Below are positions 2,888 through 22,941 of a stretch of DNA of 64,000 nt, one piece after another. Location of the stretch: positions 62,001 to 126,000 of IMG/VR virus record IMGVR_UViG_3300026292_000003; one strand, 5' to 3'. Each line of letters starts with the position of its first letter. The stretch's first letter is position 1. The translations under genes and the position numbers were made by a program. The notes under the pieces were generated by a model. It saw nothing but the letters and a program-made list of their open reading frames with translations, searched no databases and had not been told where the DNA came from.

Positions 2888-2981
2888 ATTGCATGGGTTT
2901 CGTACCTATGTAGAATACGTAAGTATTCTTTGCTTATAAAGATTATAAGCAAATCAAATATATTTGATTGGAGAAATCTCT

Positions 2982-5900: not shown

Positions 5901-7778
5901 GCTATCTCTACTAATGCATCAGATCTTGCATCAGAAATTACTAGAGCTACAGCGGCAGAAACAGCAAATGCTAACGCAATCACAGCAGAAGCAAATACAG
6001 CTAGAGCGGCAGAAACAGTTAATGCCAACGCAATCGCGGCAGAAACTACTAGAGCACAAGCGGCTGAATCAGCTAATGCATCCGATATAGCAGACAATCT
6101 AACTGAAATTACTGCAACACAATCTGGTGCAGGATTAGCAAATGACGGTACTTACAATACACCTAGTGGATCAAATTACATTGATACTGCTACATCATTG
6201 GCAAGTGCTGACACGAAGTTAGATGCGGCAATCAAAGCTGAAGAAACTAGAGCGACAGCGGCAGAGGGTGTTTTAACTAACAACCTTACAGCTGAAACTA
6301 ATAGAGCTACAGCGGCGGAAGCACAGAACGCAACTGATATCGCGGCGGAAGCTACGAGAGCGGCGGCGGCAGAAACTGTGAATGCAAATGCCATAACAAC
6401 AGTAGCTACTGATTTAGCAACTGAAGTGACTCGTGCAACTGCGGCGGAAAACGCAAATGCGGCAGACATCACATCACTAACAAGCACAGTTAACGATATT
6501 ATCAGCAACACGGATCCAGCGGCGCTAGATTCATTAACTGAAATCGTTACTGCGTTCCAAAATGCGGACAGTACACTAACAGGTGCTGTAGCGGCAAACG
6601 GAACGGCTATTGCGGCAGAAGAAACAAGAGCACTAGCGGCAGAGGCGGCATTAAGCACAGCCTTAACAAATGAAGTAAACGACAACGACACTGACCACGC
6701 GGCGGCGACAACTGACAGGGCGGCTATCCGTACTGAGTTTGCGGCGGCTGATTCAGCTCAAGACGCTGTCATCGCAACTAAACTAGCACTTGCTGGTGGA
6801 ACAATGGCGGGTGACATTGCAATGGGCGGACAAATGGTATCAGGACTGGGTACAGCAGTTAATGCTGGTGACGCAGTTTCTAAAGCAGTTATGGATGCGG
6901 CTATTTCAGCACAAGATATCACTGTATACACTACAGATGATTTAGCTGAAGGTTCAAATCTATACTACACTGATACTAGATCACGTGCGGCAATTAGTGT
7001 CAATGACGTTGCAGGAAACGGCTTGGTAAGTTACGATAATAGCACAGGTGTTATTAGTGTAAATACTAACGAATCAGTTCTTGACTTAACAGATGTATCT
7101 GATACAGCATACACTGGCAAGGACGGATACGTATTAGCAGTTAATGCGAACGAAGACGGTATGGAACTGTCAAACCCACTAAACGTTTTCTCAACACAAG
7201 AGAGACAAACAATTAATGGTGATGGTGTTGCTACGCAATACTCATTAACTTTTACAACAACACAAGATCAAGCATATGTGTTTGTTGGAGGTGTTATTCA
7301 GGATCCATCAACTCACTACACTATCGATAGTGCGGCGAAAACTATCACGTTTAACTCAGCAGTACCAGTTGGTACACAAATTGTTGTGTTATCACCAGGT
7401 GCAGGACTTAACCCAGTACTACTTGCTAACTCAGTATCATTCGACAAATTAGCGGCTGATATTAAAGCATACGTACAAAAAGGTGAAGTATCAGCTACAG
7501 GTTCAACTACAGTTGATTCATTCAACGGTGCGTTGTATCGTTCAGCGAAGTACATCATGCAGGTTGATGACGGTGCAGGTAACTATGAGACACGTGAAGC
7601 TTTAGTAGTACATGATGGTAGTACTGCATACATTACAGAGTACGCAATGGTTTATACTGGTGCAGACTTAATTGGTGATGCAAGTGTTACTATGAACGGA
7701 AACCAAGTTGAATTAACTTATACTCCGACAAGTGGTACAGCTACAGTTAAAGTGATCGCTACTTACATTGATGTGTAA
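2982..7778 (+). CDS. Giant Ala/Thr-rich coiled-coil tail fibre protein (~1598 aa)
   Basis: GGAGA RBS precedes ATG 2982 (MAFRQIK). Repeated E.TRATAAE..NA..I coiled-coil units, four DPAALDSL motifs, TDDL.EG..NL motifs, C-terminal YRSAKY...VHDG domain. Confidence 0.85.
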   Translation: MAFRQIKSPALANQAVIDTKLDVSSVSGQTATTSLNSLDTLLIHDNANAALKSITAANLIASYDTDDLGEGSTNLFFTNARAQSAVAADIASAVAAEASIARAAETANANDIAAEITRATTAEGVNATDIASEITRATAAETALDTAYKAADAGLQSQISNIISNVDPAALDSLSEIVAEFQSQDSALTAAITANSTLINNETARAQAAEQANATAISNEATRAQAAEATNASDISTEAARATAAENALDARVTANEGDISTLQTDLAAEISATNGEITTLTNDLASEISRATGAEQANAQDIANEATARANEDTSIRADFATADATTLASAQTYADTAEADAIATAAADATTKANAAQAAAEAHADTVSAAETAAINTAVAVVDAKVTTNTTDIAALETVVGDVANTPLDTTATSLGGAINELHTEVTTATTNIATNTADIATNATDIATNAADIANIISNTDPAALDSLTEIVTAFQAGDSAATAAINANATSISNEATARANADTTLQTNITAEETRATAAEGVLTANLASEVTNRQAGDATTLASAQAYADQAEADAISTAAADATTKADSAEADAKAYADTLQDTLIGDNTVDGTAGNTVTDRIATAKAGAESTAEAYTDQEVLTEKTRAMAAEAANALNITANTGDIATNATDIATNASAISTEVTDRVNAVAGVTTSLNNEIARAQAAELVNTQAITAEETRALAAEAANATAIANEVSRSTTADTTHTANIATNTNDIATNLTSINNEVARATAAEQALTTNLATETARIDSILTNTDPAALDSLTEIVSAFQSADNTINGAITSLSTTASTDRAAIRSEFAAADTALDNRLTTEEANVDALQALAGSAALATTAQTLTEAINELNAGTAADLTSVNNAIDAVESGAGLASDGSYSAHTGTHAIDSAVSLHDADSKLDAAILAEKTRAEAAEATLTTNVATNATNIGNNTTDIATNTTAIATNATAISTNASDLASEITRATAAETANANAITAEANTARAAETVNANAIAAETTRAQAAESANASDIADNLTEITATQSGAGLANDGTYNTPSGSNYIDTATSLASADTKLDAAIKAEETRATAAEGVLTNNLTAETNRATAAEAQNATDIAAEATRAAAAETVNANAITTVATDLATEVTRATAAENANAADITSLTSTVNDIISNTDPAALDSLTEIVTAFQNADSTLTGAVAANGTAIAAEETRALAAEAALSTALTNEVNDNDTDHAAATTDRAAIRTEFAAADSAQDAVIATKLALAGGTMAGDIAMGGQMVSGLGTAVNAGDAVSKAVMDAAISAQDITVYTTDDLAEGSNLYYTDTRSRAAISVNDVAGNGLVSYDNSTGVISVNTNESVLDLTDVSDTAYTGKDGYVLAVNANEDGMELSNPLNVFSTQERQTINGDGVATQYSLTFTTTQDQAYVFVGGVIQDPSTHYTIDSAAKTITFNSAVPVGTQIVVLSPGAGLNPVLLANSVSFDKLAADIKAYVQKGEVSATGSTTVDSFNGALYRSAKYIMQVDDGAGNYETREALVVHDGSTAYITEYAMVYTGADLIGDASVTMNGNQVELTYTPTSGTATVKVIATYIDV

Positions 7779-7947: not shown

Positions 7948-9810
7948 ATGGCACAAAGAAAATTTATAATTGACGGTGGTTTTAAAACTGATGACGCCTC
8001 AGAATTACTAGCCAATTTAACAATGGGTGGTTCAATCCTACCTAATGTTGATTCGGATGGTACAACTGGTTACGACTTAGGTTCGACTACTGCTAAATGG
8101 AAAGATTTATACCTTTCTCAAGGATCACTTTACATTAATAACCAAAAAGTAATCCATGATGATTCAGGTACAATCGTTTTCAAAGCAGATATGGACCAAG
8201 GCTTAACTGTTAAAACTGAGGGCACAGGAGTAATTACCCTGCAATCAACACAAACAGTAAATGTCGCTGGTACACTACAAATTACAGACGGCAAAAACAT
8301 CACTTCAAGTGGTGGAACTTCAGTTGGTTTTGGTGACAAAATTGATATGGGTTCAAATAAGATCATCAACGTTCCTAATCCAACGGATAACGGTGATGCG
8401 GCTAACAAAACTTACGTGGACTTACAGGTTGCAAACGTAATCAACGGTGCACCAGGTGCGTTAGACACACTTAACGAATTAGCAAATGCTTTAGGCGATG
8501 ATGCTAACTTCTCAACTACAGTAACAAACTCAATTGCGGCTAACGCATCTGATATTGTTGCTCTACAAACTACTTCAAGTAATAATGCGACAGCTATAGC
8601 AACAGCACAAACAGATATTGTTGCTAATACAACAGCTATTACAGCTGAAGCAGTAACAGCAAGAGCAAATGAACAAGCAAATACTGCGGCAATCAATGCT
8701 CTAGATTCTGCATACCAAACAGCTGATGCAACAATTAATTCAGCAGTAGCTTTAAAAGCAAACAAAACTTATGTTGATACACAAGACACAGCATTAGATA
8801 CATCTTTAAAAGCATACGCAGACTCAGCTGAAACAGATGCAGTAGCTACAGCTCAGTCATACACAGACGGCAGAGAAGCGGCAATCACAACTGCTTACAC
8901 AGCGGCGATTGCATCTTCAGCGTCATCAAGTGGTTCAACTGCTAACAGTTACACAGACACAGAAATTGCAACAGCAACTACAGCTATTACTTCAGCATAC
9001 CAAACTTATGCTGATACAGCTGAAACAGATGCAGTAGCAACAGCGGCGGCAGATGCAACTACTAAAGCAGATGCGGCACGTGCAGGTGCAGTAGCAGATG
9101 TTAAAGCCTCTGATTTAGATATGGGCGGAAACAAAGTTCTTTTCGGTAACGTTTATTCAACAGACGGCGATCTACCAAGTGCGGGTACATACCACGGTAT
9201 GTTTGCTCACGTACACACTGGCGGAAAAGCTGTTATGGCACATGACGGTAACTGGGTAGAACTAGCTAAAACATCAGACCTTACAACTGCGGTTAACAAC
9301 CTTGTTGACTCAGCACCAGGTGCTCTAGATACATTAAATGAACTAGCGGCGGCTATGGGTGATGATGCTAACTTTAGTACAACAATGACTAACAATTTAG
9401 CAGGCAAAGCGTCAACTGGTACTTCAATTACAGCAGGTAATGGATTATCAGGCGGTGGTGACTTTAGTACAGACAGAACAATATCTATGTCTGGTAACTT
9501 TACTGGTGACTTTACAGCAACTGGTGATATTACTGCTTACTCAGATGAAAGTTTAAAAACTAACATCCAAGTAATTGATGGTGCATTAGGTAAAGTAGAG
9601 AACATTAGTGGTTATACTTGGAATAGAATTGCAGATGATTCAAGAGCAACAGGTGTTGTTGCCCAAGAATTAGAAGCAGTACTTCCAGAAGCAGTACACA
9701 CTGATGCTGATGGTTTAAAATCAGTAGCATACGGTAACATTACAGGTCTACTAATTGAAGCGGTTAAAGAATTATCAGCTCAAGTAGCAGAACTTAAAGC
9801 TAACAAGTAA
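7948..9810 (+). CDS. Tail fibre protein with C-terminal peptidase S74 intramolecular chaperone
   Basis: C-terminus AYSDESLKTNI...GVVAQELEAVLPEAV...VAYGNITGLLIEAVKEL is the typical S74/ICD signature; APGALDTLNELA motifs. Confidence 0.9.
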   Translation: MAQRKFIIDGGFKTDDASELLANLTMGGSILPNVDSDGTTGYDLGSTTAKWKDLYLSQGSLYINNQKVIHDDSGTIVFKADMDQGLTVKTEGTGVITLQSTQTVNVAGTLQITDGKNITSSGGTSVGFGDKIDMGSNKIINVPNPTDNGDAANKTYVDLQVANVINGAPGALDTLNELANALGDDANFSTTVTNSIAANASDIVALQTTSSNNATAIATAQTDIVANTTAITAEAVTARANEQANTAAINALDSAYQTADATINSAVALKANKTYVDTQDTALDTSLKAYADSAETDAVATAQSYTDGREAAITTAYTAAIASSASSSGSTANSYTDTEIATATTAITSAYQTYADTAETDAVATAAADATTKADAARAGAVADVKASDLDMGGNKVLFGNVYSTDGDLPSAGTYHGMFAHVHTGGKAVMAHDGNWVELAKTSDLTTAVNNLVDSAPGALDTLNELAAAMGDDANFSTTMTNNLAGKASTGTSITAGNGLSGGGDFSTDRTISMSGNFTGDFTATGDITAYSDESLKTNIQVIDGALGKVENISGYTWNRIADDSRATGVVAQELEAVLPEAVHTDADGLKSVAYGNITGLLIEAVKELSAQVAELKANK

Positions 9811-10633: not shown

Positions 10634-12397
10634 ATGGCATTTAAAATTGGAAACAAAATAGTATTACATGACGCAGATCCTTCTGCAACACTATTAACAG
10701 AAAGTAACTTAGATAGGTTACAAATTAATGGTGTAGATGTATTAACGCATGACGGTACTACAGTTACATTAAAAAATGTAGATATTAATGACGCATTAGA
10801 GAGTACAATAAACACAGACAATCTTACAGAAGGAACTACAAATTTATTTTTTACAGATGCTAGAGCAGTATCAGCATTATCAGGTTTAGCAACAACAGTC
10901 AGTAATAATACTACAGCAATTAATAATAATGCTACAGCAATTTCAAATAATGCAACAGCAATCGCAAACAATGCCACAGCAATTACAAATAATGCTACAG
11001 CTATTACAAATAATGAAACAGCAATTAATAATAATGTTACAGCAATCGCAAACACACTAGTAGATGCAAAAGCATATACAGATACTAGAGAAACTGCAAT
11101 TACTACAGCATATACAGCGGCTATAGCGTCATCTACGTCAAGTGGTAGTACAGCGGCAAACGCATATACAGATGCAGAAATTGCTACAGCTACAGCAAGT
11201 ATAACATCAGCATATCAAACAGCTGATGCAACAACTTTATCTTCAGCTCAAACTTATGCGGATACAGCAGAAGCAGATGCAGTAACTACAGCTAACGCAT
11301 ATACAGATGCCAGAGAAGTCGCAATCACTACAGCATATCAAACTTATACAGATACAGCAGAAGCAGATGCAAAAGCATATGCAGATACACAAATTGCAAA
11401 TTTAGTTGATTCTGCACCAACTACATTAGACACACTAAATGAATTAGCGTCAGCACTAGGTGACGATGCTAACTTCTCAACTACAGTAACAAATTCAATA
11501 GCAACTAAACTTCCACTAGCTGGTGGAACAATGGCAGGAGATCTTACATTAAGTGGAGCTCCAACAAATAATCTTCATGCGGCTACTAAAGCATATGTTG
11601 ATTCAGCAGTAACTGGTGGAACAGGTGCATTAGATACAGACGATATTGCAGAAGGAACAACTAATTTATACTATACAGATGCTAGAGCAGATGCTAGAGC
11701 AACCTTAAGAATTAATGCGGCGACAACAGACAATATAGATGAAGGTAGTACTAATTTATATTATACAAATACTAGAGCAAGAACAGAAATAGAAGGTGCA
11801 GATTTAGATTTAGGTACAAACAAAATATTATATTCTAATGTTTATGCTACAACTGGTGATTTACCAAGTGCAACAAGTTATCATGGAATGTTTGCTCATG
11901 TACACGGCACAGGCAAAGGATATTTTGCTCATGCAAATAACTGGGTAGAACTAGCAAATCAAAGTGATATTCCAACAAACAATAATCAATTGACTAATGG
12001 TGCAGGTTATGTTACAACTGATACAAATACAACATATACAGCAGGTAACGGATTATCATTAGTTGGCACAGAATTTTTAATGAGTGGTAGTTACACAGGT
12101 GACTTTACAGCAACAGGTGATGTTACAGCATACTCAGATAAAAGATTAAAAAGAAATATTGAAACTATTAATAATGCAGTAGATACTGTAAGCAAATTAC
12201 GTGGTGTAAATTTTGAAAAAGATGGTAGACATAGCACTGGTGTAATAGCACAAGAAGTAGAAGAAGTTTTACCTCAAGTAGTACATACAGCTCCAGATGG
12301 TATGAAATCAGTAGCATATGGTAATATTGTAGGACTATTAATTGAGGCTATTAAAGAACAACAAAAAGAGATAGAGGAGTTAAAAAAGAAAATATAA
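10634..12397 (+). CDS. Second tail fibre protein with C-terminal peptidase S74 chaperone
   Basis: AYSDKRLKRNI...GVIAQEVEEVLPQVV...VAYGNIVGLLIEAIKE; late promoter CATAAATAG at 10608. Confidence 0.9.
   Translation: MAFKIGNKIVLHDADPSATLLTESNLDRLQINGVDVLTHDGTTVTLKNVDINDALESTINTDNLTEGTTNLFFTDARAVSALSGLATTVSNNTTAINNNATAISNNATAIANNATAITNNATAITNNETAINNNVTAIANTLVDAKAYTDTRETAITTAYTAAIASSTSSGSTAANAYTDAEIATATASITSAYQTADATTLSSAQTYADTAEADAVTTANAYTDAREVAITTAYQTYTDTAEADAKAYADTQIANLVDSAPTTLDTLNELASALGDDANFSTTVTNSIATKLPLAGGTMAGDLTLSGAPTNNLHAATKAYVDSAVTGGTGALDTDDIAEGTTNLYYTDARADARATLRINAATTDNIDEGSTNLYYTNTRARTEIEGADLDLGTNKILYSNVYATTGDLPSATSYHGMFAHVHGTGKGYFAHANNWVELANQSDIPTNNNQLTNGAGYVTTDTNTTYTAGNGLSLVGTEFLMSGSYTGDFTATGDVTAYSDKRLKRNIETINNAVDTVSKLRGVNFEKDGRHSTGVIAQEVEEVLPQVVHTAPDGMKSVAYGNIVGLLIEAIKEQQKEIEELKKKI
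10904..11050 (+). repeat. Seven degenerate 21-nt tandem repeats encoding NNxTAIx heptads
   Basis: AATAATGCTACAGCAATT-NNN-type units read directly from the sequence. Confidence 0.9.
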
Positions 12398-12412: not shown

Positions 12413-12817
12413 ATGAAAGTAAGCGATAATACACAGATATCAATGCCAATCCGTAATATGATTGCGATCATAGGAGCAATTTGTATGGGAGTTTGGGCTT
12501 ACTTTGGAATAACTGAAAAGTTAAATCAACATAGCAATACACTTACATTAATGCAAAAAGACCTAGAGTCAAATACTGAATTTCGTATTAAGTATCCACG
12601 TGGAGAATTAGGACAAAGTCAGAATGATTTAGAGCAGTTTATGTTAATAGAAGAATTATATAAAAGTGTTGAAAAAATGGAAAAAGTATTAGAATCAAAT
12701 ATGACTAACAAAGTTAACATTGACTTTTTAAAAGAACAAGTAGATAAAATGTTAAATGATATTGAGAAGTTAAAAGACAAGCAACGTGAGTTTGCTAACG
12801 GTAACGGAGGTCACTAA
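12413..12817 (+). CDS. Hypothetical membrane-anchored coiled-coil protein
   Basis: N-terminal TM segment (MIAIIGAICMGVWAYFGI) then coiled coil; late promoter CATAAATA at 12399. Confidence 0.6.
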   Translation: MKVSDNTQISMPIRNMIAIIGAICMGVWAYFGITEKLNQHSNTLTLMQKDLESNTEFRIKYPRGELGQSQNDLEQFMLIEELYKSVEKMEKVLESNMTNKVNIDFLKEQVDKMLNDIEKLKDKQREFANGNGGH

Positions 12818-13029
12818 TGGTAGAAACAGTAGTAGCCCTATTAATGCTTATAAACAACGAAATTAAAGAGCACAGAATACAAGAATCTATGGGTGTATGT
12901 TTAAGAGGTAAACGTACAGCAGAAAGACAATATTCAGAAGGTGTAAAATACCAATGCATCAAATCTAAAGCAAAACTTGAGTTAAACATAGATGGAACTA
13001 AAACAATTAAAGCTCTTATATTAGAATAA
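12817..13029 (+). CDS. Small hypothetical protein (two Cys), coupled to the previous gene
   Basis: TAATG overlap, GGAGG RBS. Confidence 0.6.
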   Translation: MVETVVALLMLINNEIKEHRIQESMGVCLRGKRTAERQYSEGVKYQCIKSKAKLELNIDGTKTIKALILE

Positions 13030-13131
13030 AGAGATTATAAACTACTATATAACACGAGCTATATAGATAAATAATAATACAAGCAATATGCTTGTAATTA
13101 ACGTTAATTACAATTATGACAGGAGAGTAAT

Positions 13132-13320
13132 ATGTCGACATTACCAGCAACCGGTTCAAATATTTCTATGTCAACTGTGCGTAACTATTTTGGATTAAGT
13201 GGAACAGTTTCCATGAGTACATTAGGTAGCACAATCTCACCGTCAGTGACGTCTAATATCAAACTTTCAGCTACATTTGGTGGTTGGCAGTATCCGTCAC
13301 CGTCTGGTTCACATCCATAA
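13132..13320 (+). CDS. 62-aa Ser/Thr-rich protein, probable fibre-tip cap (gp38-attachment-domain-like)
   Basis: Own late promoter (GATAAATA 13066) and AGGAGA RBS; M.TLP..G..ISMS.V start resembles small proteins that follow S74 fibres. Confidence 0.6.
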   Translation: MSTLPATGSNISMSTVRNYFGLSGTVSMSTLGSTISPSVTSNIKLSATFGGWQYPSPSGSHP

Positions 13321-13361
13321 GAAATATTGTAAAACATATTTAATAGGTACGTTGTTTATAC

Positions 13362-13396
13362 TTGACAACGTGCCTATTGTAATGTAAAATAAATAC
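13362..13396 (+). promoter_or_regulatory. Overlapping sigma70-like (TTGACA-N17-TAAAAT) and late (AATAAATAC) promoters
   Basis: Both motifs read directly; the -35 box lies in hairpin 13342-13378. Confidence 0.7.
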
Positions 13397-13455: not shown

Positions 13456-13875
13456 ATGATTAGAACTCGTTATGAGATTGAAACGTTTGTACTTGGAGCA
13501 CACCCGTCTCCAGCCAGAAAGGCACAAGTACTTACAGAAGAGCTAATGAAAGCTCGTGAAACAAAACACCCAGACCTTCCAATATTAGAAGCAATTTATA
13601 AAGATTTTTCTGCAGAACATAATGTAGAAGAACTTTCAAAAGATATTGAATCTACTGAAGAAGAATATTGGGTACACAGACTAGCAAAACTAGCGGCAAT
13701 TGATATTTTAACAATTGGTAAAGTACAACCAGAGCATATGGCTTATATGGTTGCGTTACCAGATGAAGCTTTCAAAGCATCAGTTAAAGAAGCCACAAGT
13801 ATTGCTAAACAACTAAATTATGAGGTTCAACAAATTGAAGCTGAACTTCAAGCAGATTTAGCATCTGCAAAATAA
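13456..13875 (+). CDS. Hypothetical helical protein, possible fibre assembly factor
   Basis: AGGAGA RBS; no motif recognised; role inferred from position only. Confidence 0.55.
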   Translation: MIRTRYEIETFVLGAHPSPARKAQVLTEELMKARETKHPDLPILEAIYKDFSAEHNVEELSKDIESTEEEYWVHRLAKLAAIDILTIGKVQPEHMAYMVALPDEAFKASVKEATSIAKQLNYEVQQIEAELQADLASAK

Positions 13876-13880
13876 ACTGA

Positions 13881-14531
13881 ATGGTAACCACTCCATCATT
13901 TTATCATAAAAAGAATAATTCCGCTTCTGTAGCTATTTGCGTTCCTGTGCGAGATAATGTTACTGCGGTCTTTGCTTACAGTCTTGCTATGCTTCAACGA
14001 AAGTGTGGTGAGGCTGGGTTAGCTACTTCTCTACATTTTATTATGGGTAGTGAAGTTACTATACAAAGACAACAGTTAGTATCTGAAGCACTAGAAACAA
14101 ATTGTACTCACATTATGTGGATTGATTCTGATATGCAATTTCCAGTAGATACCCTAAATATATTATTAGCGGCAGATAAAGATATTGTTGCTGGAAATTA
14201 TTCAACAAGAGTTCCACCACATAGACCAGTCGCTTTTAGAAGTAAAAATAATCTAGATGATAGAGTTTTTACTGGTACAGGCTTAGAAAAAGTTTGGGCT
14301 GTAGGAAGTGGAATGATGTTAGTAAAAAGAGAAGTTTATGAAAAGTTAAATTCACCTTTTTATAAAATTGAATATTCAGAAGACTATTCAAGTTTAGTAG
14401 GAGAAGACGTATATTTTTGTACAAAAGCTAACGAAGCAGGATATGAAGTATATGTAAGTCACGAACTGAGTGACAAAATAGCACACATAGGAACACGTGC
14501 ATTTACAGTTAAAGGCGATTGCAATGATTAA
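13881..14531 (+). CDS. GT-A fold (family 2-like) glycosyltransferase
   Basis: VAICVP start, WIDSDM DxD motif, G.GMMLVKREV, GEDVYFC, HIG. Confidence 0.85.
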   Translation: MVTTPSFYHKKNNSASVAICVPVRDNVTAVFAYSLAMLQRKCGEAGLATSLHFIMGSEVTIQRQQLVSEALETNCTHIMWIDSDMQFPVDTLNILLAADKDIVAGNYSTRVPPHRPVAFRSKNNLDDRVFTGTGLEKVWAVGSGMMLVKREVYEKLNSPFYKIEYSEDYSSLVGEDVYFCTKANEAGYEVYVSHELSDKIAHIGTRAFTVKGDCND

Positions 14532-15615
14532 TATAAAGAATAACCAAAAAGAATTTAAAGGACAAAACGTTGTCACACCTTGGGATAGACTTAAAAGGTT
14601 TATGTTTGATAGTTACCCAATTATTAAAACCCCAATAAGATTAAAAGACGAAGAAGATATTTTAGATATAGCAAAAAAATATAAAAACGAAGCAGATATG
14701 GCTTGGGTTGTATTTGATGAAATAGAAGTTAATCCAAAATTTCCTTGGCATTATAGACCAAGTGATATAGGTAAAAAGGTTATTCATACGTTTCCTAGAG
14801 TAGTTAAAAGAACAAACAGACCAGTGAGCTGGGGGGATGTTAGATTAGTTCCTACTAACGGAGTTTCCCACGGTGAGGTAGAAAATAAATTGGTAGCAAG
14901 TTTCCACGTTGCAGAATTTGATATCTTTATGATTAGTTACCACGAAGCTGAAGCAGATGAGAATTTTCAAAAATTAAAAAACAGATTTAAAGATGCACAA
15001 CACGTAAAGAACGTTGAAGGTATTGGTAATGCTCACAAACGTGTGGGTGAATTAGCAAAAACTGAAATGGTTTATATTGTTGATGCAGATGCAGATATTA
15101 TGGGTGACTTTAGTTTTGATTATATTCCACCAATGAGTAAAAGAAAAAATACAACATATGTATGGAGTGCTAGAAATCCTGTAAATGGATTAGAGTACGG
15201 GTATGGTGGAGTTAAGTTATTTCCAAAAGTTCAGTTATTAGAACTAGGACATGAATTGCCAGATTATACAACTGGTGCAAGTTTTTATCAGCCAATATCA
15301 GATGTATCAAATATTACAAGATTTAACAAAGACCCTTATAGAACTTGGAGAAGTGCATTTCGTGAATGTGTTAAACTAGCAAGTTCAGTTAATCCTAATC
15401 AAAAACAAAAAGAGACAGATGAAAGATTAGAAGCATGGTGTACAAAAGATGTTGGAGCCCGTTTTGGTCGTTACTGTTTAAAAGGTGCCTTAGAAGGCAA
15501 AGAGTATGGATTAGCAAACAAAGATAATAACGAAGCATTAGTTAAAATTAACGACTTTGAATGGTTACGTGAACAATTTGTTGCTAGTATGAAAAAGAGA
15601 GTCACTGACAAGTAA
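14524..15615 (+). CDS. Glycosyltransferase-like protein
   Basis: IVDADA DxD motif, GIGNAH, YGYGGVKLFP, WRSAFRECVKL; start placed at ATG 14524 overlapping the upstream gene. Confidence 0.6.
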   Translation: MINIKNNQKEFKGQNVVTPWDRLKRFMFDSYPIIKTPIRLKDEEDILDIAKKYKNEADMAWVVFDEIEVNPKFPWHYRPSDIGKKVIHTFPRVVKRTNRPVSWGDVRLVPTNGVSHGEVENKLVASFHVAEFDIFMISYHEAEADENFQKLKNRFKDAQHVKNVEGIGNAHKRVGELAKTEMVYIVDADADIMGDFSFDYIPPMSKRKNTTYVWSARNPVNGLEYGYGGVKLFPKVQLLELGHELPDYTTGASFYQPISDVSNITRFNKDPYRTWRSAFRECVKLASSVNPNQKQKETDERLEAWCTKDVGARFGRYCLKGALEGKEYGLANKDNNEALVKINDFEWLREQFVASMKKRVTDK

Positions 15616-15909
15616 ATGATTCAATGGTTAAAGAAATCAATTCATCATTTAAAAGTAGAAACAGGATGGGGCTACTTTTATCATTTATGGCATAGCCTTT
15701 GCAATAGCTGGGCTTTAATTGTTATAGCATTTAAAAGTGTAGTACACGGATTATTTCCTTGGATATGGAAAGCAGATGCACCTAAAGGGGTTATTCGTAT
15801 GTATCATCAAATTATGAGAATTGAACATATAGAAAAGATGGACAAGTTAAGAAAGTTACCAAAAGATGAACGATATAAATCCAATAAACCTATTGACCCT
15901 ATTGAATAG
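15616..15909 (+). CDS. Small membrane protein, DUF6356-like
   Basis: HL......YFYHL...VHGLFPWIW pattern. Confidence 0.55.
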   Translation: MIQWLKKSIHHLKVETGWGYFYHLWHSLCNSWALIVIAFKSVVHGLFPWIWKADAPKGVIRMYHQIMRIEHIEKMDKLRKLPKDERYKSNKPIDPIE

Positions 15910-16453
15910 TTATGGCGACGTAATAGAACTGAACCAAAAGCTAGACAGTAATAAGATTATTAATGAATTAGAAAGTTTACAATGGGAAAAAGGCCCTAAT
16001 GGTAAACAAGGCATTAATCTTACAGGACCAACAACAGGTCTTGGACTTGAAGATAAAAATAAACACGATAAAGATCAAGAAGCAAATGAAAATTTACTTA
16101 AATGTCCATCATTATATGAATTCTTTAAACAATGGTCAGACTTGGCTAGATGTAGAGCAGTAAAACTAGAAGCTGGTAGCTTCTTTACTATGCATCGAGA
16201 CGCATTTAGATTTAACCCTCAAATTAGAATTTTTATTCCATTAAATAAAACTGAAATACACCAATGGAACTTTTTATACGACGATAAACGTGTAGAGTTT
16301 AAACCAGGTGTTCCTTATGTATTAAATACTCGTAAGCAACACGGAAGTTTTGCAATGGATAGTGGAATATATCATATATTAATGAGTTTATATTTAACTG
16401 AAAATAATTTAAAAACAATTATACAATCATTACCAAACTGTAAGGAAAGATAA
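15866..16453 (+). CDS. 2OG-Fe(II) oxygenase (Asp/Asn beta-hydroxylase-like)
   Basis: HRD...RIFIPL...LNTRKQH (HxD...H triad). Confidence 0.8.
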   Translation: MNDINPINLLTLLNSYGDVIELNQKLDSNKIINELESLQWEKGPNGKQGINLTGPTTGLGLEDKNKHDKDQEANENLLKCPSLYEFFKQWSDLARCRAVKLEAGSFFTMHRDAFRFNPQIRIFIPLNKTEIHQWNFLYDDKRVEFKPGVPYVLNTRKQHGSFAMDSGIYHILMSLYLTENNLKTIIQSLPNCKER

Positions 16454-17403
16454 TGAAAGAAAAAACAGACAAAAATTATCATAGTGGCGAAAAGATTGAA
16501 GATTTATATAAAAATGTAAAAGATGCAGATCATAAAAAAGTAGAAGGTAATACACAAAAAGATAGTAACTACGAAGATGAAATGTATAGTGAAGAGCAAA
16601 TAGCTAGACACAATAAAATGGATAACATCTTTAAAGTTGATAATGTTCCAAGTAGATGGGAACACAATAAAACTCGTAGTACTTTTCATTTTGATCCTTT
16701 TGGTGATCCAACTGAACAAACATTTATTATTACAAATAGATTTGTAGGAGATTTTGAACCTGCGGTTAAGTATGCAATAGCAAATGCTAAAGAACAAACT
16801 ATAGGAAATTATAGGCCACGTAATTTAAGTAAACAAGATAAAGATTTACACGATGGAGAAATACAAGATATTATAACGGCATCAGGTAAAGATGATCTTA
16901 GTGCAATGTATCACGATTCAGTAATAAGAAGAAAAGTTGATGAAGACGGGAATTACAAAGTACAAGAAAATAGAATACCTGAATATGAGGTGTTGTTTAA
17001 TATGATAGATACATTAGGTGTAGAGGTTCATCAATCAAGATTACATATACAAAAGTTAGGACAAGTAACACCAGCACATATTGATCAGCAGATGAGATAT
17101 GCTAGGCCAGGTTGGCGTAAAATATGGACTGAAGCAGGAGCAGATAAGAATCCTTTAAAGTTAAGAAGGTTTTTAGTTATGTTGCAAGATTGGGATTACG
17201 GTCACGTATGGCAATTTGGTAACACTTATTATCAAGGATACAAAGCAGGTGAGTGTATAACATACGATTGGTGTAATATGCCACACGGTACGGCTAACTT
17301 TGGATATACTCCAAGAGTTACATTTCAGTTTACAGGATTTATAAGTGAAAAAACGCAAGAGTATATAAACAATCCAGATAAAAATAGAATCATTGAAGTA
17401 TGA
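16453..17403 (+). CDS. 2OG-Fe(II) oxygenase-like protein
   Basis: Q.TPAHID...DWDYGH...PHGTANFGYTPRVT (HxD...H...R). Confidence 0.75.
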   Translation: MKEKTDKNYHSGEKIEDLYKNVKDADHKKVEGNTQKDSNYEDEMYSEEQIARHNKMDNIFKVDNVPSRWEHNKTRSTFHFDPFGDPTEQTFIITNRFVGDFEPAVKYAIANAKEQTIGNYRPRNLSKQDKDLHDGEIQDIITASGKDDLSAMYHDSVIRRKVDEDGNYKVQENRIPEYEVLFNMIDTLGVEVHQSRLHIQKLGQVTPAHIDQQMRYARPGWRKIWTEAGADKNPLKLRRFLVMLQDWDYGHVWQFGNTYYQGYKAGECITYDWCNMPHGTANFGYTPRVTFQFTGFISEKTQEYINNPDKNRIIEV

Positions 17404-18209
17404 CAATAAAACGACCATTTACAACTATGACAGAAAAAGAAAAGTTAGAATGGACTTTTCGAGAAAAAATAGTAAAACAAAAAAGACAACCAAATACTAC
17501 AGTAGAAGAGTATGGGCATGATAAAGGTGGTAGATTTATTGTAGGAAAAACAGGAGCAGATGCTTGGACAGATGATGCAGTACAAAACATAGACTGGACT
17601 TTACCAGAAAATCAATTTAATTATACGTGGAATAAAAATGGTTATAGAGGACCAGATGATAATGGAGATGTAGATATTATTTTTGCTGGTAGTAGTTTAA
17701 CAATAGGAACAGGTGTTCCTTATGAAAAAAGTTATCCACACCTCGTCTCAGAAGAACTTAATCTTAAACATATTAATATAAGTGATTTTGATACACTATT
17801 AGATTTAGCAGATAGTTTACTTGACTTTAATCATTTAAATCCAAAGTATATTATATTAGGTGATTGCTGGGCAATTAATAGTACTAGTTGGTTAATGAGA
17901 TTTTGGTTAAAGAAAGAAAAAGATTTAGAAACAATAGATTTGGTAAGAAAGACTTTTTATGATAGCAATACCAAAGTATTTAAAATATTTGAGTTAGCAT
18001 TAAAGGAAGCATTTCCAAATGCAAAATGTTTTATATTTGAACCAGAAGAAAAAAGAAAGTTATGGTCATATGGACATGAGTTACAACATATTAAATCAGT
18101 AAAATATAAAAAGAGTGATATTATTGATCTAGGAAGAGATCAAACTCACCCTGGTCCAAAAACGCATAGAATATTTGCTGATAAAGTAAAGAGTTTAATT
18201 AATGAATAA
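17400..18209 (+). CDS. SGNH/GDSL hydrolase-like protein (esterase/acyltransferase)
   Basis: FAGSSLTIGTG block I; RDQTHPG DxxH block V. Confidence 0.7.
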   Translation: MTIKRPFTTMTEKEKLEWTFREKIVKQKRQPNTTVEEYGHDKGGRFIVGKTGADAWTDDAVQNIDWTLPENQFNYTWNKNGYRGPDDNGDVDIIFAGSSLTIGTGVPYEKSYPHLVSEELNLKHINISDFDTLLDLADSLLDFNHLNPKYIILGDCWAINSTSWLMRFWLKKEKDLETIDLVRKTFYDSNTKVFKIFELALKEAFPNAKCFIFEPEEKRKLWSYGHELQHIKSVKYKKSDIIDLGRDQTHPGPKTHRIFADKVKSLINE

Positions 18210-18984
18210 TAATGGTGAAGATTTAATATTGGCTATGGGAGCTCCAGGTTCAAGATGGAGTGGAGCAATACGTATACTATCTTTGATGTATGAAAATATT
18301 AATACATCGGATAACAATGACGAATGGAACTACGAAAAGTCTGTAAGTTATAACAAATATTTACAAGCTACTAGGCTTGAAGATAGACGTGAAGAACCAA
18401 ATAGACAAATTAAAGTTGGCTGGCATCGTGGTGCATATTGGGGTCCAGGAAATCCAGCAGGTGATAAATTTGATGTATTAGATACACTAACTAAAGAAGA
18501 GATAATAGAAGAATTTAAAAAGCCTTTTACTAATTGGGAACCAGGAATTAAAATAATTAAGAGTCACTGGTTCAGTTATCATATTCCTTTATTAAGAGAA
18601 TTATTTCCAAAAGCTATACTGTGGTCATTTCATGATACTGATAAGATTTGCCAAGACTGGTGGCATACTGTTGGCGGTTGGGAAATTTCCTATCCTAATT
18701 ATGATTGGTATAAAGATGACGAAACTATGCTTAAACAAATAGGCATAGAAAATAATAATATAAAAGATAATTTTAATTTAAAAAGATATACTACTTGGAA
18801 AGAAGCAGTTAAAGAGTTAGGCTTTCCTGTAGACATAAGAACGCCAGCAGAAATAATAGATATGGAACCAAAATTTATAGATTCTTTTAAACCGTCAATG
18901 TATAGTAATTCAGAAAACTTTAATAAGTTCTTAGATTCAGTTTTTAGCAGAAAAGAAATGGGTATTATTAACCCAACTTTGTAG
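18202..18984 (+). CDS. Sulfotransferase-like P-loop protein
   Basis: LILAMGAPGSRWS loop and IIKSHWF motif resemble PAPS-binding sulfotransferase folds, but are divergent. Confidence 0.45.
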   Translation: MNNNGEDLILAMGAPGSRWSGAIRILSLMYENINTSDNNDEWNYEKSVSYNKYLQATRLEDRREEPNRQIKVGWHRGAYWGPGNPAGDKFDVLDTLTKEEIIEEFKKPFTNWEPGIKIIKSHWFSYHIPLLRELFPKAILWSFHDTDKICQDWWHTVGGWEISYPNYDWYKDDETMLKQIGIENNNIKDNFNLKRYTTWKEAVKELGFPVDIRTPAEIIDMEPKFIDSFKPSMYSNSENFNKFLDSVFSRKEMGIINPTL

Positions 18985-19402: not shown

Positions 19403-19479
19403 ATGTGTCCTATCCAATGTGTGCAATCGTCGTGTGGGTCATCGCATTCACTACAAGTAGAGTCTCCAGTATCCTGCAT
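19399..19479 (-). CDS. Putative 26-aa Cys/His micropeptide (MQDTGDSTCSECDDPHDDCTHWIGHI)
   Basis: AAGGA upstream; overlaps the gp15 end; ATGA-coupled to NUDIX. Confidence 0.45.
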   Translation of the reverse strand: MQDTGDSTCSECDDPHDDCTHWIGHI

Positions 19480-20812
19480 TATAGATTCCTTCATAACTGT
19501 TAACCCATTCTGTTCCGTTCCATTCTAATTGATCACTACTTGATAAGTTTGTAACGTATTGTGTATCGGATACTGTACTGCTATCAAAACTAACATTCCA
19601 AGATGAACCGTTGTATTCAATAATGTCATATTTGTTAGCAACTAATCCGCTCCAAGTTGGTGTTGATGGAATAGGATTGATTAATATATAACGTTGTCCT
19701 ATTGCTGAACTAGGAACTGTCCCGTCCCCTGGGTAATTAATTGATGGATCTAAAATAGCATTTACTGCTGATAATGTATTTGTAGGTAAAGTTGAAGTAT
19801 CAATGTCTACAGTTAATAAGTTAGGATTACTTGGGTGTTCATCTAAACGTCCAATAATATCTTCATCTTTAGCTCCTGGGTCTTTTGATTTTCTAAGTCT
19901 TAATTGACTTATTCCAGGTCTTAATACACCAAATGGAGTAAGTTCTTTAGTCCATTCTAAAACGTTTCCGTCATCATCTAAATTACTTCCGTTGGTATTT
20001 AATAGCTGAAGGTCATTGTTCTCATATTTTACTTTTCTGTTTTCATATGTTACAACTGTATATTGTAACGTTTCGTTATTAAATGGTTGTTCAGCTTTAA
20101 ATAGATCTAAGTTTTCATCATCCAAGTTATAAAGTTCACTAATGATTGTGTGAATTAATTTTTGTTGTTTAACCTTTGCAGGAGGATTTATATAAACTGG
20201 TATATCAAATGACATTGTAGCAACATCAATAATATCGTCAATACTTGATCCAACACTTCTTGTACTCCAAGTAGTATTAGTAAGTTCTACGTGAGATAAT
20301 GCAGTCCAGTCTAATGGACTAGCATTTGTTCTAATATCTAATGTAGGATTAAATAAAACAAGCATCTGTTCTAGTAACTGTAATTTTTGATCTGTATTTG
20401 ATGTCCATACGTCTGCGTTCATTTGCATTAAGTATGGAACAGGAGCATGACGCTCTACAGTATAACTATTACCTTTTTCGTTTTTATATTCTCCAGTAGT
20501 TTGGTCGTATTTCTTTTCGTATACCTGAACTTTATCGACATGATCTTGGTAAGTACGTCTTTCAGGTATTAAATTTAAATTAGTTACATAACAACTTATA
20601 AATGGAACAGTATTCATAATGTTTTCACTGTTCTCTCTTGTTATGTGAGCCGCCATTCTGTTTATGTCACCATAACGTACTGGAACTTTATGATATACTG
20701 GAAGACCAGAATCTTCATTTTTGCCCATTTGTACACTGAAGCCACTAAACAATCTTATAAATTGTTGAATGTATCTTCTTATTTGTTTATCATAAAAGTA
20801 TTGTTGGCTCAT
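19451..20812 (-). CDS. T4 gp15-like tail terminator/sheath stabiliser with C-terminal extension
   Basis: YFYDKQIRRYI..F..LFS, VPVRYG, PVPY, QLLEQMLVLFNP motifs. Confidence 0.85.
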   Translation of the reverse strand: MSQQYFYDKQIRRYIQQFIRLFSGFSVQMGKNEDSGLPVYHKVPVRYGDINRMAAHITRENSENIMNTVPFISCYVTNLNLIPERRTYQDHVDKVQVYEKKYDQTTGEYKNEKGNSYTVERHAPVPYLMQMNADVWTSNTDQKLQLLEQMLVLFNPTLDIRTNASPLDWTALSHVELTNTTWSTRSVGSSIDDIIDVATMSFDIPVYINPPAKVKQQKLIHTIISELYNLDDENLDLFKAEQPFNNETLQYTVVTYENRKVKYENNDLQLLNTNGSNLDDDGNVLEWTKELTPFGVLRPGISQLRLRKSKDPGAKDEDIIGRLDEHPSNPNLLTVDIDTSTLPTNTLSAVNAILDPSINYPGDGTVPSSAIGQRYILINPIPSTPTWSGLVANKYDIIEYNGSSWNVSFDSSTVSDTQYVTNLSSSDQLEWNGTEWVNSYEGIYNAGYWRLYL

Positions 20813-21972: not shown

Positions 21973-22941
21973 ATGTTTAGATTTTATACAGAAAGAAAAT
22001 GGGCGTTATGGGCTTGGTTAGGTTCAGCAATCATTTTATCATCTTTATGGGTTCAAGTAAAAATTGACGTTAAAATCAATGAATGGTTTGGTCAGTTTTA
22101 CGATATGATCCAAAAAGCACTGGCTACACCTAATGCAATTACCATAGGTGAATACTGGGCCAGTTTATTATCTTTTATTACACTAGCAGGAATATATGTA
22201 GCACTAGCAGTAGCAATAAGTTTCTTTACAGCTCACTTCTTGTTTAGATGGAGAACTGCAATGGTAGAATGGTATCATGCAGTTTATGATAGAGCAAGAA
22301 AAATAGAAGGAGCGGCACAAAGGGTACAAGAAGATACTATAAAATTCTCTAGAATAATGGAATCACTTGGTACAAGTTTAATTGAATCAATTATGGTTCT
22401 TGTGCAGTTTGTTCCAATCTTGTTAGGACTATCAATAGGTATACCAATATTCTTTTTTGGTGATTGGCAATATGGATTAGTTACGGGTGCTATTATTTGG
22501 TCCGTAGGTGGTACATTATTTTTAATTGCATTAGGTTGGTTACTAAGATTAGTTGGCGTTGAATATGACTTGCAAAAGAAAGAAGCCGCTTATCGTAAAA
22601 TACTTGTTATAGCAGAAGATGACGATAACGTCAGACCTAAAACAATAAATGAGTTATTTGATGATGTTAGGAAAATTCATTTCTTATCATATATTAAATA
22701 TCTTTATTTTAATATTGGTCGTATTGCTTATTTACAAGCAAACGTTTTAAGTGCCTACGTATTTCTTGCACCAGCCATTGTAGCAGGCGTTGTTACATTA
22801 GGTGTGATGCAACAAATAATTAGAGCATTTGGTCGTGTAGAAGGAAGTATGCAATACTTACTTAAAGCATGGCCTACAATTATTGAATTAATGAGTGTAT
22901 ATAGACGTTTAAGAGAGTTTGAAAAACAGATTACTAAATAA
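21973..22941 (+). CDS. sbmA: SbmA/BacA-family peptide transporter (TM domain only)
   Basis: INEWFGQFYDMIQKAL, FRWRTAM, IEGAAQRVQEDT, EAAYRKILV, W.TIIELMSVYRRL. Confidence 0.9.
   Translation: MFRFYTERKWALWAWLGSAIILSSLWVQVKIDVKINEWFGQFYDMIQKALATPNAITIGEYWASLLSFITLAGIYVALAVAISFFTAHFLFRWRTAMVEWYHAVYDRARKIEGAAQRVQEDTIKFSRIMESLGTSLIESIMVLVQFVPILLGLSIGIPIFFFGDWQYGLVTGAIIWSVGGTLFLIALGWLLRLVGVEYDLQKKEAAYRKILVIAEDDDNVRPKTINELFDDVRKIHFLSYIKYLYFNIGRIAYLQANVLSAYVFLAPAIVAGVVTLGVMQQIIRAFGRVEGSMQYLLKAWPTIIELMSVYRRLREFEKQITK

What the first reader, a model, noticed from the sequence alone, without database searches (positions are those of the whole stretch)
13132..13320. 62-aa protein with three internal pseudo-repeats: a minimal cap for a trimeric fibre tip?
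Seen: NISMSTV / TVSMSTL / NIKLSATF at about 15-17 aa spacing, with its own late promoter and strong RBS. Known: T-even gp38 adhesins are monomers that dock on the trimeric fibre tip after chaperone autocleavage. Inference: this is an attachment-only, pseudo-threefold cap with no glycine-rich receptor-binding domain, so specificity would have to come from elsewhere, possibly a modification.
Basis: partly seen in the sequence, partly recalled or inferred. Interest (0 to 1): 0.6.

Follow-up and report, generated by a model that had tools for sequence, protein, structure and literature searches.

The report
One-chain cap for three-chain tail fibres
This 62-residue phage protein is most likely a single-chain cap whose three internal repeats each grip one chain of the trimeric tail-fibre tip, and it is the smallest member of an undescribed marine-phage family that elsewhere uses the same 55-residue module to mount swappable domains on the fibre tip.

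Summary
The ORF at 13132-13320 is a real gene. It has more than 200 marine-metagenome relatives and dN/dS of about 0.16. It has its own ATAAATA late-type promoter, a 5' hairpin, an AGGAGA ribosome site and a strong 3' hairpin. The three repeats exist, but sequence statistics for them are weak.

Other evidence supports the cap idea:
- **Position.** In every lineage examined, the gene lies after a tail-fibre gene that ends in a self-cleaving Peptidase_S74 chaperone.
- **Module.** The same 55-residue N-terminal module also heads proteins of 165-690 aa. Two of them share 53 of 55 module residues and then carry unrelated C-terminal domains.
- **Predicted complex.** One copy with three mature fibre tips scored ipSAE 0.72 (best control 0.00; 58 of 80 solved complexes and 2 of 110 mismatched pairs reach the mark). 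Partner pLDDT was at least 83 and at least 93% of contacts were shared between runs. Each repeat touches the last six residues (GDVTAY) of a different fibre chain.
- **Covariation.** Predicted contact pair S27 and fibre T(-3) changes together: Cys27 always co-occurs with Cys(-3), in 10 of 10 pairs against 0 of 97, across mosaic fibre backgrounds and in both fibres of one phage.

The protein is not related to gp38 or PAAR, but it appears to work like them. No experiment supports any of this yet.

The parts
13132..13320 (+). Cap gene: 62 aa plus stop codon. Module = residues 1-51 (M..LPATG ... TFGG); exposed tail = residues 52-62 (WQYPSPSGSHP).
   Evidence: more than 200 relatives; dN/dS 0.16.
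13153..13182 (+). Repeat 1 (residues 8-17, GSNISMSTVR). Predicted to pair with the C-terminal strand of fibre chain copy 3.
   Evidence: contacts at residues 8-15 and 17.
13201..13218 (+). Repeat 2 (residues 24-29, GTVSMS). Predicted to pair with fibre chain copy 1. S27 is the residue that covaries with fibre residue -3.
   Evidence: pair 1.1:128 with 2:27.
13252..13272 (+). Repeat 3 (residues 41-47, SNIKLSA). Predicted to pair with fibre chain copy 2.
13067..13073 (+). ATAAATA late-promoter-like motif, 59 nt before the ATG.
   Evidence: present in 48 of 48 relatives' upstream regions.
13078..13096 (+). 5' UTR hairpin (TACAAGCA-ATA-TGCTTGTA). The stem varies among relatives with compensating changes.
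13094..13111 (+). Perfect 18-bp palindrome GTAATTAACGTTAATTAC. Palindromy is kept in relatives (AACGTT / ATCGAT / TAGCTA cores). Role unknown.
13121..13126 (+). Shine-Dalgarno sequence AGGAGA.
   Evidence: a Shine-Dalgarno-like purine run (GGAG, GAGG or AGGA) lies 4-18 nt before the start in 48 of 48 relatives.
13336..13385 (+). 3' stem-loop directly after the stop codon (-23.6 kcal/mol, z -4.97). It probably ends or stabilises the transcript. The next gene's ATAAATA follows at 13389.
   Evidence: 3' hairpins of -18 to -28 kcal/mol in all relatives.
10634..12397 (+). Tail fibre B, 587 aa: mature part residues 1-500, Peptidase_S74 chaperone residues 501-587. In relatives it lies directly before the cap gene.
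   Evidence: Pfam E 2.2e-13.
12116..12133 (+). Fibre B residues 495-500 (GDVTAY), the mature C-terminus. This is the predicted docking site of the cap on all three chains.
   Evidence: fragment residues 125-130.
7948..9810 (+). Tail fibre A, 620 aa, also ending in a Peptidase_S74 chaperone. Probably a second client of the cap.
   Evidence: E 4.4e-13. In the Cys-clade phage G001 both fibres carry Cys at -3.
9523..9540 (+). Fibre A residues 526-531 (GDITAY), its mature C-terminus.
13456..14531 (+). Two invariably linked downstream genes: a 139-aa all-helical protein (13456-13875) and a 216-aa Anp1-like glycosyltransferase-like protein (13881-14531). Their role in the system is unknown.
   Evidence: present in 80 of 80 loci at fixed distance.

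Best explanation
The 62-aa protein is a monomeric cap for the C-terminal tips of this myovirus's two S74-type tail fibres.

Proposed sequence of events:
1. Each fibre folds as a trimer with help from its own C-terminal Peptidase_S74 chaperone. The chaperone then cuts itself off after ...GD(V/I)TAY. This step follows from what is known of the S74 family.
2. That leaves three short terminal strands exposed. One cap molecule folds onto them (it is disordered in the model when alone). Its three repeats (about residues 8-17, 24-29 and 41-47) each pair with the GDVTAY strand of a different chain, giving the single chain local threefold symmetry. This step is predicted and is backed by covariation.
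3. The conserved tail after TFGG (WQ(N/Y)P...) then forms the outermost tip of the fibre. This step is inferred.

In related phages the same module is followed by 100-630 further residues, which differ even between near-identical modules. The module is therefore a general socket that mounts a monomeric, exchangeable domain on a trimeric fibre. The window's protein is the socket alone. Its likely job is to seal and stabilise the cut fibre end, and perhaps to make first contact with the host. Host specificity would lie mainly in the mosaic fibre region just upstream of the conserved tip.
For: - **Real, selected gene.** More than 200 clusters at 67-92% identity; dN/dS 0.16 over 874 pairs; conserved promoter, hairpins and ribosome site.
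- **Synteny.** In most of the 80 IMG/VR loci with enough upstream sequence, an S74 domain ends 95-170 nt before the gene. The same holds in distant lineages with 57-62-aa and 206-680-aa versions.
- **Modular build.** A profile search of 1.8 billion representatives found the module alone (54-69 aa) or at the N-terminus of proteins of 165-687 aa. P0131 and P0154 share 53 of 55 module residues and then have unrelated C-terminal domains. P0129, a cap-only form, follows the same fibre type as these two.
- **Predicted complex.** Three copies of fibre B residues 371-500 plus one cap gave ipSAE 0.72, 0.72 and 0.75, with the best of 3 controls at 0.00. The mark is reached by 58 of 80 solved complexes and 2 of 110 mismatched pairs. 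At least 93% of contacts are shared between runs. Partner pLDDT is at least 83, against 48 for the cap alone. Contacts are fibre residues 125-130 of copies 3, 1 and 2 with cap residues 8-15/17, 24-29 and 41-47 respectively.
- **Covariation at a predicted contact.** The pair is fragment residue 128 (fibre residue -3) with cap residue 27. Counts over all cap/fibre pairs fetched: S-T 85, C-C 10, A-T 7, A-I 2, A-V 1, T-T 2, and no Cys paired with non-Cys. The C-C pairs lie in 5 different fibre contexts with two S74 subtypes. Within the Cys clade the fibre ends are only 34-54% identical to each other, and for several members (for example L040, 80% to the window's fibre) they are closer to non-Cys fibres. 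In phage G001 both S74 fibres carry Cys at -3.
- **Conserved docking site.** Only the last ~37 fibre residues are conserved; the region upstream of them is mosaic.
Against: - Nothing is experimental. There is no virion proteomics and no binding assay, and the phage is uncultured.
- The complex model used my own unpaired alignments and a 3:1 set-up unlike the tool's calibration. Only one stoichiometry and one fibre were tried.
- The Cys27 caps are probably one clade, so on the cap side the covariation may be a single event.
- The cap alone folds poorly (pLDDT 48).
- Sequence statistics for the repeats are weak.
- The ...TAY|SD ending is common to many S74 fibres that have no such cap, so the site is not specific on its own.
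- What a cap without a payload does is inferred, not shown.
Confidence: 0.7

Rival explanations
1. It is a transient assembly factor. It binds the fibre end during or just after chaperone cleavage and then leaves, so it is not part of the virion. This would resemble the separate 'chaperone caps' of Alteromonas phages.
For: It sits downstream of the fibre gene, where tail-fibre assembly genes usually lie. Binding to the fibre end is predicted. Transient chaperone caps are described in marine phages (PMC10579305).
Against: The fibres already carry their own S74 chaperone. Homologues fuse the module to large, exchangeable C-terminal domains, which makes sense only if the module stays on the fibre. 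The Cys-Cys pairing suggests a permanent, possibly covalent, link.
Confidence: 0.12
2. It is mainly a substrate or carrier for modification, for example O-glycosylation of its many Ser/Thr by the glycosyltransferase-like gene two genes downstream. The modification would supply receptor specificity.
For: The protein is 37% Ser/Thr. The 216-aa Anp1-like glycosyltransferase-like gene is linked in 80 of 80 loci. A possible distant relative, KVP40.0254, has a long Ser/Thr-rich tail. This reading is compatible with the cap model.
Against: There is no direct evidence. Many Ser/Thr positions are invariant and lie in the predicted strand-pairing interface, where they would be buried. The glycosyltransferase match is below Pfam's cut-off (23.9 against 28.8 bits).
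Confidence: 0.1
3. It is an N-terminal anchor that forms homotrimers, or binds one per chain (3:3), or docks on another virion part such as the baseplate or the 1604-aa fibre. On this reading the 3:1 model is an artefact of the way the job was set up.
For: Most receptor-binding proteins are trimers with N-terminal anchors. Only a 3:1 job was run.
Against: In the model all three repeats are used equivalently, one per chain, which a 3:3 arrangement would not need. The covarying fibre residue lies at the C-terminal tip of both S74 fibres.
Confidence: 0.06
4. It is the decaying stump of a once longer adhesin gene and has no function of its own.
For: Longer homologues exist.
Against: dN/dS is 0.16. 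There are more than 200 clusters with near-invariant sequence, including the tail after TFGG. It has its own conserved promoter, hairpins and ribosome site. Cap-only forms recur in several lineages.
Confidence: 0.02

Closest known systems
PAAR-repeat spike tip proteins (T4 gp5.4, T6SS PAAR; PF05488)
   Same: A small monomer gains local threefold symmetry from three internal repeats. It binds the blunt end of a trimeric beta-structure through main-chain hydrogen bonds. It occurs alone or carries extension domains (PMC12407873). The predicted geometry here has the same logic.
   Different: There is no sequence relation (no Pfam hit). There are no PAAR motifs and no His/Cys metal site. It caps receptor-binding fibres rather than the membrane-piercing central spike. 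It is about 55 aa rather than about 95 aa.
gp38 adhesins of T2/T6/S16-type Straboviridae
   Same: A monomeric protein, encoded downstream of the distal fibre gene, attaches through a conserved N-terminal domain to the tip of the trimeric fibre. The family evolves by module exchange (PMC12032242, PMC3157838).
   Different: There is no sequence similarity, no glycine-rich motifs and no polyglycine sandwich. The window's protein has no receptor-binding domain at all. Its partner fibres mature through an S74 self-cleaving chaperone, which gp37 lacks. Attachment is predicted to be by three repeated strands rather than by the gp38 attachment domain.
Separate tail-fibre chaperones acting as transient 'caps' (Alteromonas phages V22 and A5)
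   Same: A small protein in a marine phage, encoded after the fibre gene, is proposed to sit on the fibre tip (PMC10579305).
   Different: Those chaperones resemble S74-type intramolecular chaperone domains and replace them. Here the fibre keeps its own S74 domain, and the cap is predicted to bind the end that cleavage creates.
KVP40.0254 (phrog_30374), an uncharacterised protein of Vibrio phage KVP40
   Same: It has a similar N-terminus, MPTPTTGAISIGTVRDYF...SLSQ... (PHROG E 1e-3; hhalign probability 75% over 28 columns). KVP40 also has two S74 fibres, ending in GNVTAY and GNITAY.
   Different: Homology is not established. The gene is not next to a fibre gene. The module is followed by a long Ser/Thr-rich tail.

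Membership tests
gp38 adhesin (T2/S16 type) | Sequence membership (Pfam/PHROG gp38 families) | tested here: not met
   Pfam scan at E up to 0.1 gave 0 families. The only PHROG hit is phrog_30374, of unknown function.
gp38 adhesin (T2/S16 type) | Glycine-rich motifs alternating with hypervariable segments (polyglycine sandwich) | tested here: not met
   The 62-aa sequence has none; its Gly residues are isolated.
gp38 adhesin (T2/S16 type) | Monomer attached through its N-terminal part to the tip of the trimeric distal fibre | tested here: inconclusive
   This is predicted (ipSAE 0.72 against 0.00 for the best control) and backed by covariation. It has not been measured.
PAAR repeat (PF05488) | Three PAAR motifs and a Pfam match | tested here: not met
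   No Pfam hit and no PAAR-like motif in the sequence.
PAAR repeat (PF05488) | Metal site formed by His/Cys at the apex | tested here: not met
   The protein has one His (H61) and no Cys.
PAAR repeat (PF05488) | Monomer with local threefold symmetry that caps a trimeric beta-structure | tested here: inconclusive
   In the model, each of the three repeats contacts a different chain. This is an analogy in function only.
Peptidase_S74 fibres (the partner proteins) | C-terminal intramolecular chaperone domain with the conserved ...Y|SD..LK.N cleavage region | tested here: met
   Fibre A E 4.4e-13 and fibre B E 2.2e-13, both above the Pfam cut-off. The cleavage motifs are visible in the sequence. 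Cleavage itself was not tested.
Sortase LPXTG sorting signal | C-terminal LPXTG followed by a hydrophobic stretch and a basic tail | tested here: not met
   LPATG is at residues 4-8, the N-terminus, with no hydrophobic or basic tail. The resemblance is taken as coincidental, although L4, P5, T7 and G8 are invariant in the family.
New family defined here (S74-fibre tip cap module) | N-terminal M-x-LPxTG, three [IV]-x-[ML]-[SG] strands, and a closing TFGG | tested here: met
   Alignments A1 and A3; profile hits.
New family defined here (S74-fibre tip cap module) | Gene lies downstream of a Peptidase_S74 fibre gene | tested here: met
   True of most of the 80 loci, and of all distant lineages checked. 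In the window, two foreign genes are inserted in between.

The most novel reading that the evidence does not exclude
The 55-residue module is a previously unrecognised, general symmetry adaptor for S74-matured tail fibres. Once the chaperone has cut itself off, a single chain with three strand repeats plugs onto the three freed C-terminal strands. In one clade it would be locked by a disulfide. This would let a trimeric fibre carry one monomeric, freely exchangeable receptor-binding domain, or nothing but a conserved 11-residue tip. It would be a third, independent invention of the monomer-on-trimer solution, after PAAR and gp38, and it is widespread in abundant marine myoviruses.
Probability: 0.55. 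Interest if true: 0.75.

Novelty: new variant of a known kind. Interest (0 to 1): 0.68.

Why it matters
S74-type self-cleaving fibres are very common among phages. What happens at the fibre end after the chaperone leaves has mostly been treated as the finished tip. A dedicated one-chain cap or adaptor would add a new layer to how host range is built and exchanged in abundant ocean phages.

It would also give a third example of how a monomer solves the symmetry mismatch with a trimer. At about 55 residues, the module could be a compact, portable handle for attaching chosen binding domains to S74 fibres in laboratory phage work. The Cys-Cys pair gives an immediate and cheap experimental test.

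Tried and rejected
- **T4 late promoter.** TATAAATA is absent upstream and depleted in the window. The motif in use is ATAAATA.
- **Cap alone.** The AlphaFold2 model was poor, pLDDT 48, so no fold search was made on it.
- **Cultured phages.** tblastn of the cap and of two distant cap-only relatives found nothing, apart from E~5 hits to KVP40-like phages.
- **Locus search.** The search for related loci with the diverse alignment A3 failed for lack of a conserved stretch. A1 was used instead.
- **Solved structures.** A PDB sequence search with the family profile found nothing.
- **Repeat statistics.** Sequence-only tests were weak.
- **Other covariation.** Apart from position 27 against -3, fibre-tip and cap variants (V/I at -4, Y/F at -1, S29Y, N18D) showed no clear pattern.
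- **Long homologues.** Pfam and PHROG scans gave almost nothing. An Atlas look-up of P0134's C-terminal part was uninformative. P0131's C-terminal domain gave only a lead to galactose-binding or CBM-like folds.
- **139-aa neighbour.** Its fold is confident (pLDDT 92) but has no solved analogue.
- **RNA runs.** Contigs from three marine metatranscriptomes cover the fibre end, the spacer and the first ~77 nt of the gene in relatives. Contigs cannot show a separate transcript, and the near-identical strain's run had no contig over the gene.
- **Sortase signal.** Rejected; see the membership test.

Full report
**Setting.** The window is bases 62001-126000 of a 221,643-base IMG/VR virus record with estimated completeness of 60%. 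It encodes a contractile-tail phage: tail sheath at 31787-34216, large terminase at 40214-41770, and T4 gp15-like neck protein at 19451-20812. The nearest cultured sheath proteins are only about 37-40% identical, from the jumbo phages Atu_ph07, PA5oct and Munch. This is therefore an uncultured marine myovirus distantly related to the T4 superfamily.

**The observation.**
- The ORF at 13132-13320 encodes 62 aa, 37% Ser/Thr.
- AGGAGA lies five bases before the ATG.
- The T4 octamer TATAAATA is not upstream. ATAAATA is at 13067, and that heptamer is this phage's late-type signal. It occurs 25 times on the + strand and once on the - strand, nearly always just before a start codon.
- In 48 distinct upstream regions from relatives, the same order recurs: ATAAATA, then a hairpin whose stem changes by compensating substitutions, then a small palindrome, then a Shine-Dalgarno-like purine run (GGAG/GAGG/AGGA). 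A strong hairpin follows the stop codon in all of them (in the window -23.6 kcal/mol, z -4.97). The gene looks like a self-contained, stabilised late transcript.
- It is under purifying selection, dN/dS 0.16.
- By sequence statistics alone the repeats are only marginal.

**Family and context.**
- The word search found more than 200 clusters of 60-62-aa proteins at 67-92% identity, all from marine metagenomes and none named.
- In relatives the gene lies 95-170 nt after a tail-fibre gene that ends in a Peptidase_S74 self-cleaving chaperone. It is always followed by a 139-aa and a 216-aa gene.
- In the window, two genes otherwise known from Pelagibacter podophages (12413-13029) are inserted between the fibre and the small gene. 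None of 80 relatives has them.
- Because the word search is blind to longer proteins, I ran the profile search against 1.8 billion representatives. It found the same ~55-residue module, from M-x-LPxTG to TFGG, either alone (54-69 aa) or at the N-terminus of proteins of 165-687 aa.
- These longer genes also lie directly after S74 fibre genes in more distant T4-like phages. So do distant cap-only forms.
- P0131 (206 aa) and P0154 (310 aa) share 53 of 55 module residues and then diverge completely. The 62-aa P0129 follows the same fibre type.
- This is the pattern of a conserved attachment module with an exchangeable, or absent, payload. The C-terminal domain of P0131 resembles galactose-binding or carbohydrate-binding folds, but that is only a lead.

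**The fibres.** Both S74 fibres in the window end their mature part in ...TGDFTATGD(V/I)TAY, followed by SD..LK.N. Across relatives only the last ~37 residues before the cleavage site are conserved. The region upstream of that is a mosaic, as expected for the host-range part.

- I folded three copies of fibre B residues 371-500 (the mature end) with one copy of the small protein.
- The tool's verdict: the model supports binding; it does not show it.
- Scores were ipSAE 0.72, 0.72 and 0.75, with the best of three controls at 0.00. The mark is reached by 58 of 80 solved complexes and 2 of 110 mismatched pairs, although these counts hold only roughly because my own alignments and a 3:1 set-up were used.
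- At least 93% of contacts were shared between runs. Partner pLDDT was at least 83, against 48 for the protein folded alone.
- The interface is what a pseudo-threefold cap requires. Residues 125-130 (GDVTAY) of fibre copies 3, 1 and 2 touch cap residues 8-15/17, 24-29 and 41-47 respectively. These are the three repeats.
- Residues 48-62 are not in the interface.
- No solved structure resembles the cap by sequence, so the pass is unlikely to come from memory of a similar complex.

**Independent check by covariation.**
- One of the most confident predicted pairs is fibre fragment residue 128 (three residues before the cleavage site) with cap residue 27.
- Across all cap/upstream-fibre pairs fetched, the combinations are S-T 85, C-C 10, A-T 7, A-I 2, A-V 1 and T-T 2. 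Cys never pairs with non-Cys.
- These are the only cysteines in either segment.
- The ten C-C pairs fall in five fibre contexts with two different S74 subtypes. Within the Cys clade, the fibre ends are only 34-54% identical to each other, and for several members (for example L040, 80% to the window's fibre) they are closer to non-Cys fibres. Simple linkage therefore does not explain the pairing.
- In the one Cys-clade phage with a long contig, both S74 fibres carry ...GD(V/I)CAY. This suggests that the cap serves both fibres.
- The simplest reading is direct contact, probably a disulfide after release into sea water. That last point is inference.
- The Cys27 caps are probably one clade, so the cap-side change may have happened once.

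**Mechanism proposed.**
1. The S74 chaperone helps the trimer fold and then removes itself. This is family knowledge and was not tested here.
2. One cap molecule folds onto the three freed terminal strands, one repeat per chain. This is predicted and supported by covariation.
3. The conserved tail WQ(N/Y)P..., or in relatives a whole extra domain, becomes the outermost tip. This is inferred.
4. For the payload-free form, the likely role is to seal and stabilise the fibre end and perhaps to make a generic first contact. Specificity would lie in the mosaic fibre region.

I put 0.7 on the binding and cap part and less on the exact role.

**Comparison with known systems.** It works like PAAR/gp5.4 on the central spike: a monomer with three repeats that zips by main-chain bonds onto a trimer and occurs with or without extension domains (PMC12407873). 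It also works like gp38 on gp37: a monomeric tip protein with a conserved N-terminal attachment part (PMC12032242, PMC3157838). It is a member of neither; the sequence, motif and metal-site tests all fail. It differs from the separate chaperone 'caps' of Alteromonas phages (PMC10579305), because here the fibre keeps its own S74 domain. I found no paper that describes this module.

**Rivals.** The alternatives are a transient assembly factor, a modification substrate, another partner or stoichiometry, and a decaying gene stump. They are listed with their evidence in the Rival explanations section. The modification idea remains untested. The only facts bearing on it are the Ser/Thr richness and the invariably linked glycosyltransferase-like gene, whose Pfam match is below the cut-off.

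**Limits.**
- All evidence is computational.
- Only one complex job was available, so 3:3 stoichiometry, fibre A, the uncleaved precursor and cross-lineage controls were not run.
- RNA-library contigs show that relatives' sequence across the fibre end and the start of the gene is present in marine metatranscriptomes. They cannot show a transcript.

Noticed in passing
window 12413-13029: There are two genes here: a 134-aa protein with an N-terminal membrane helix and coiled coil (phrog_20984), and a 70-aa protein (phrog_24646). They share 66-72% nucleotide identity with Pelagibacter podophages (HTVC010P, HTVC019P, the Skadi phages). They are inserted between fibre B and the cap gene and are absent from all 80 IMG/VR relatives. 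This hints at gene exchange with SAR11 phages and perhaps at a SAR11 host.
   Followed up: partly
window 21973-22941: The phage encodes a full-length SbmA/BacA-like inner-membrane peptide transporter (Pfam PF05992, E 1.3e-138). This is an unusual auxiliary gene for a phage.
   Followed up: no
window, whole (for example 2880, 7889, 9889, 10609, 13067, 31721, 40189): ATAAATA occurs 25 times on the + strand and once on the - strand, almost always just upstream of a start codon. Its total count is below chance expectation (26 against 44). It is a clear late-promoter-like signal. The full T4 octamer occurs only 3 times.
   Followed up: partly
window 13078-13111 and the same place in L003-L101: The 5' UTR of the cap gene holds a hairpin whose stem varies with compensating changes, followed by a palindrome whose core changes symmetrically (AACGTT / ATCGAT / TAGCTA). 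In close relatives this spacer is more conserved than the coding sequence. It may be an RNA-stability or regulatory element.
   Followed up: partly
window 13456-13875: This 139-aa gene always follows the cap gene. Its model is a confident all-helical fold (pLDDT 92) with no solved analogue. It resembles uncharacterised proteins of cyanophage S-ShM2 and Ralstonia phage RP12.
   Followed up: partly
L002:3929-4522 (Vibrio phage KVP40, KVP40.0254): The annotated start is probably 21 codons too early. From the internal Met, the N-terminus (MPTPTTGAISIGTVRDYF...) resembles the cap module and is followed by a long Ser/Thr-rich tail. KVP40 also has two S74 fibres, ending in GNVTAY and GNITAY. It is a possible cultured system for testing the idea.
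   Followed up: partly
window 2964-7778: This 1604-aa Ala/Thr-rich, highly repetitive fibre-like protein lies upstream of the two S74 fibres. It has no Pfam match, and relatives carry versions of about 1576 aa.
   Followed up: no
window 14497-18984: This run of genes is conserved downstream of the cap locus (372, 97 [DUF6356], 195, 316, 269 and 260 aa) and has no PHROG matches. By eye, some look like cupin/2OG-oxygenase-like or SGNH-like enzymes. That impression was not tested.
   Followed up: no
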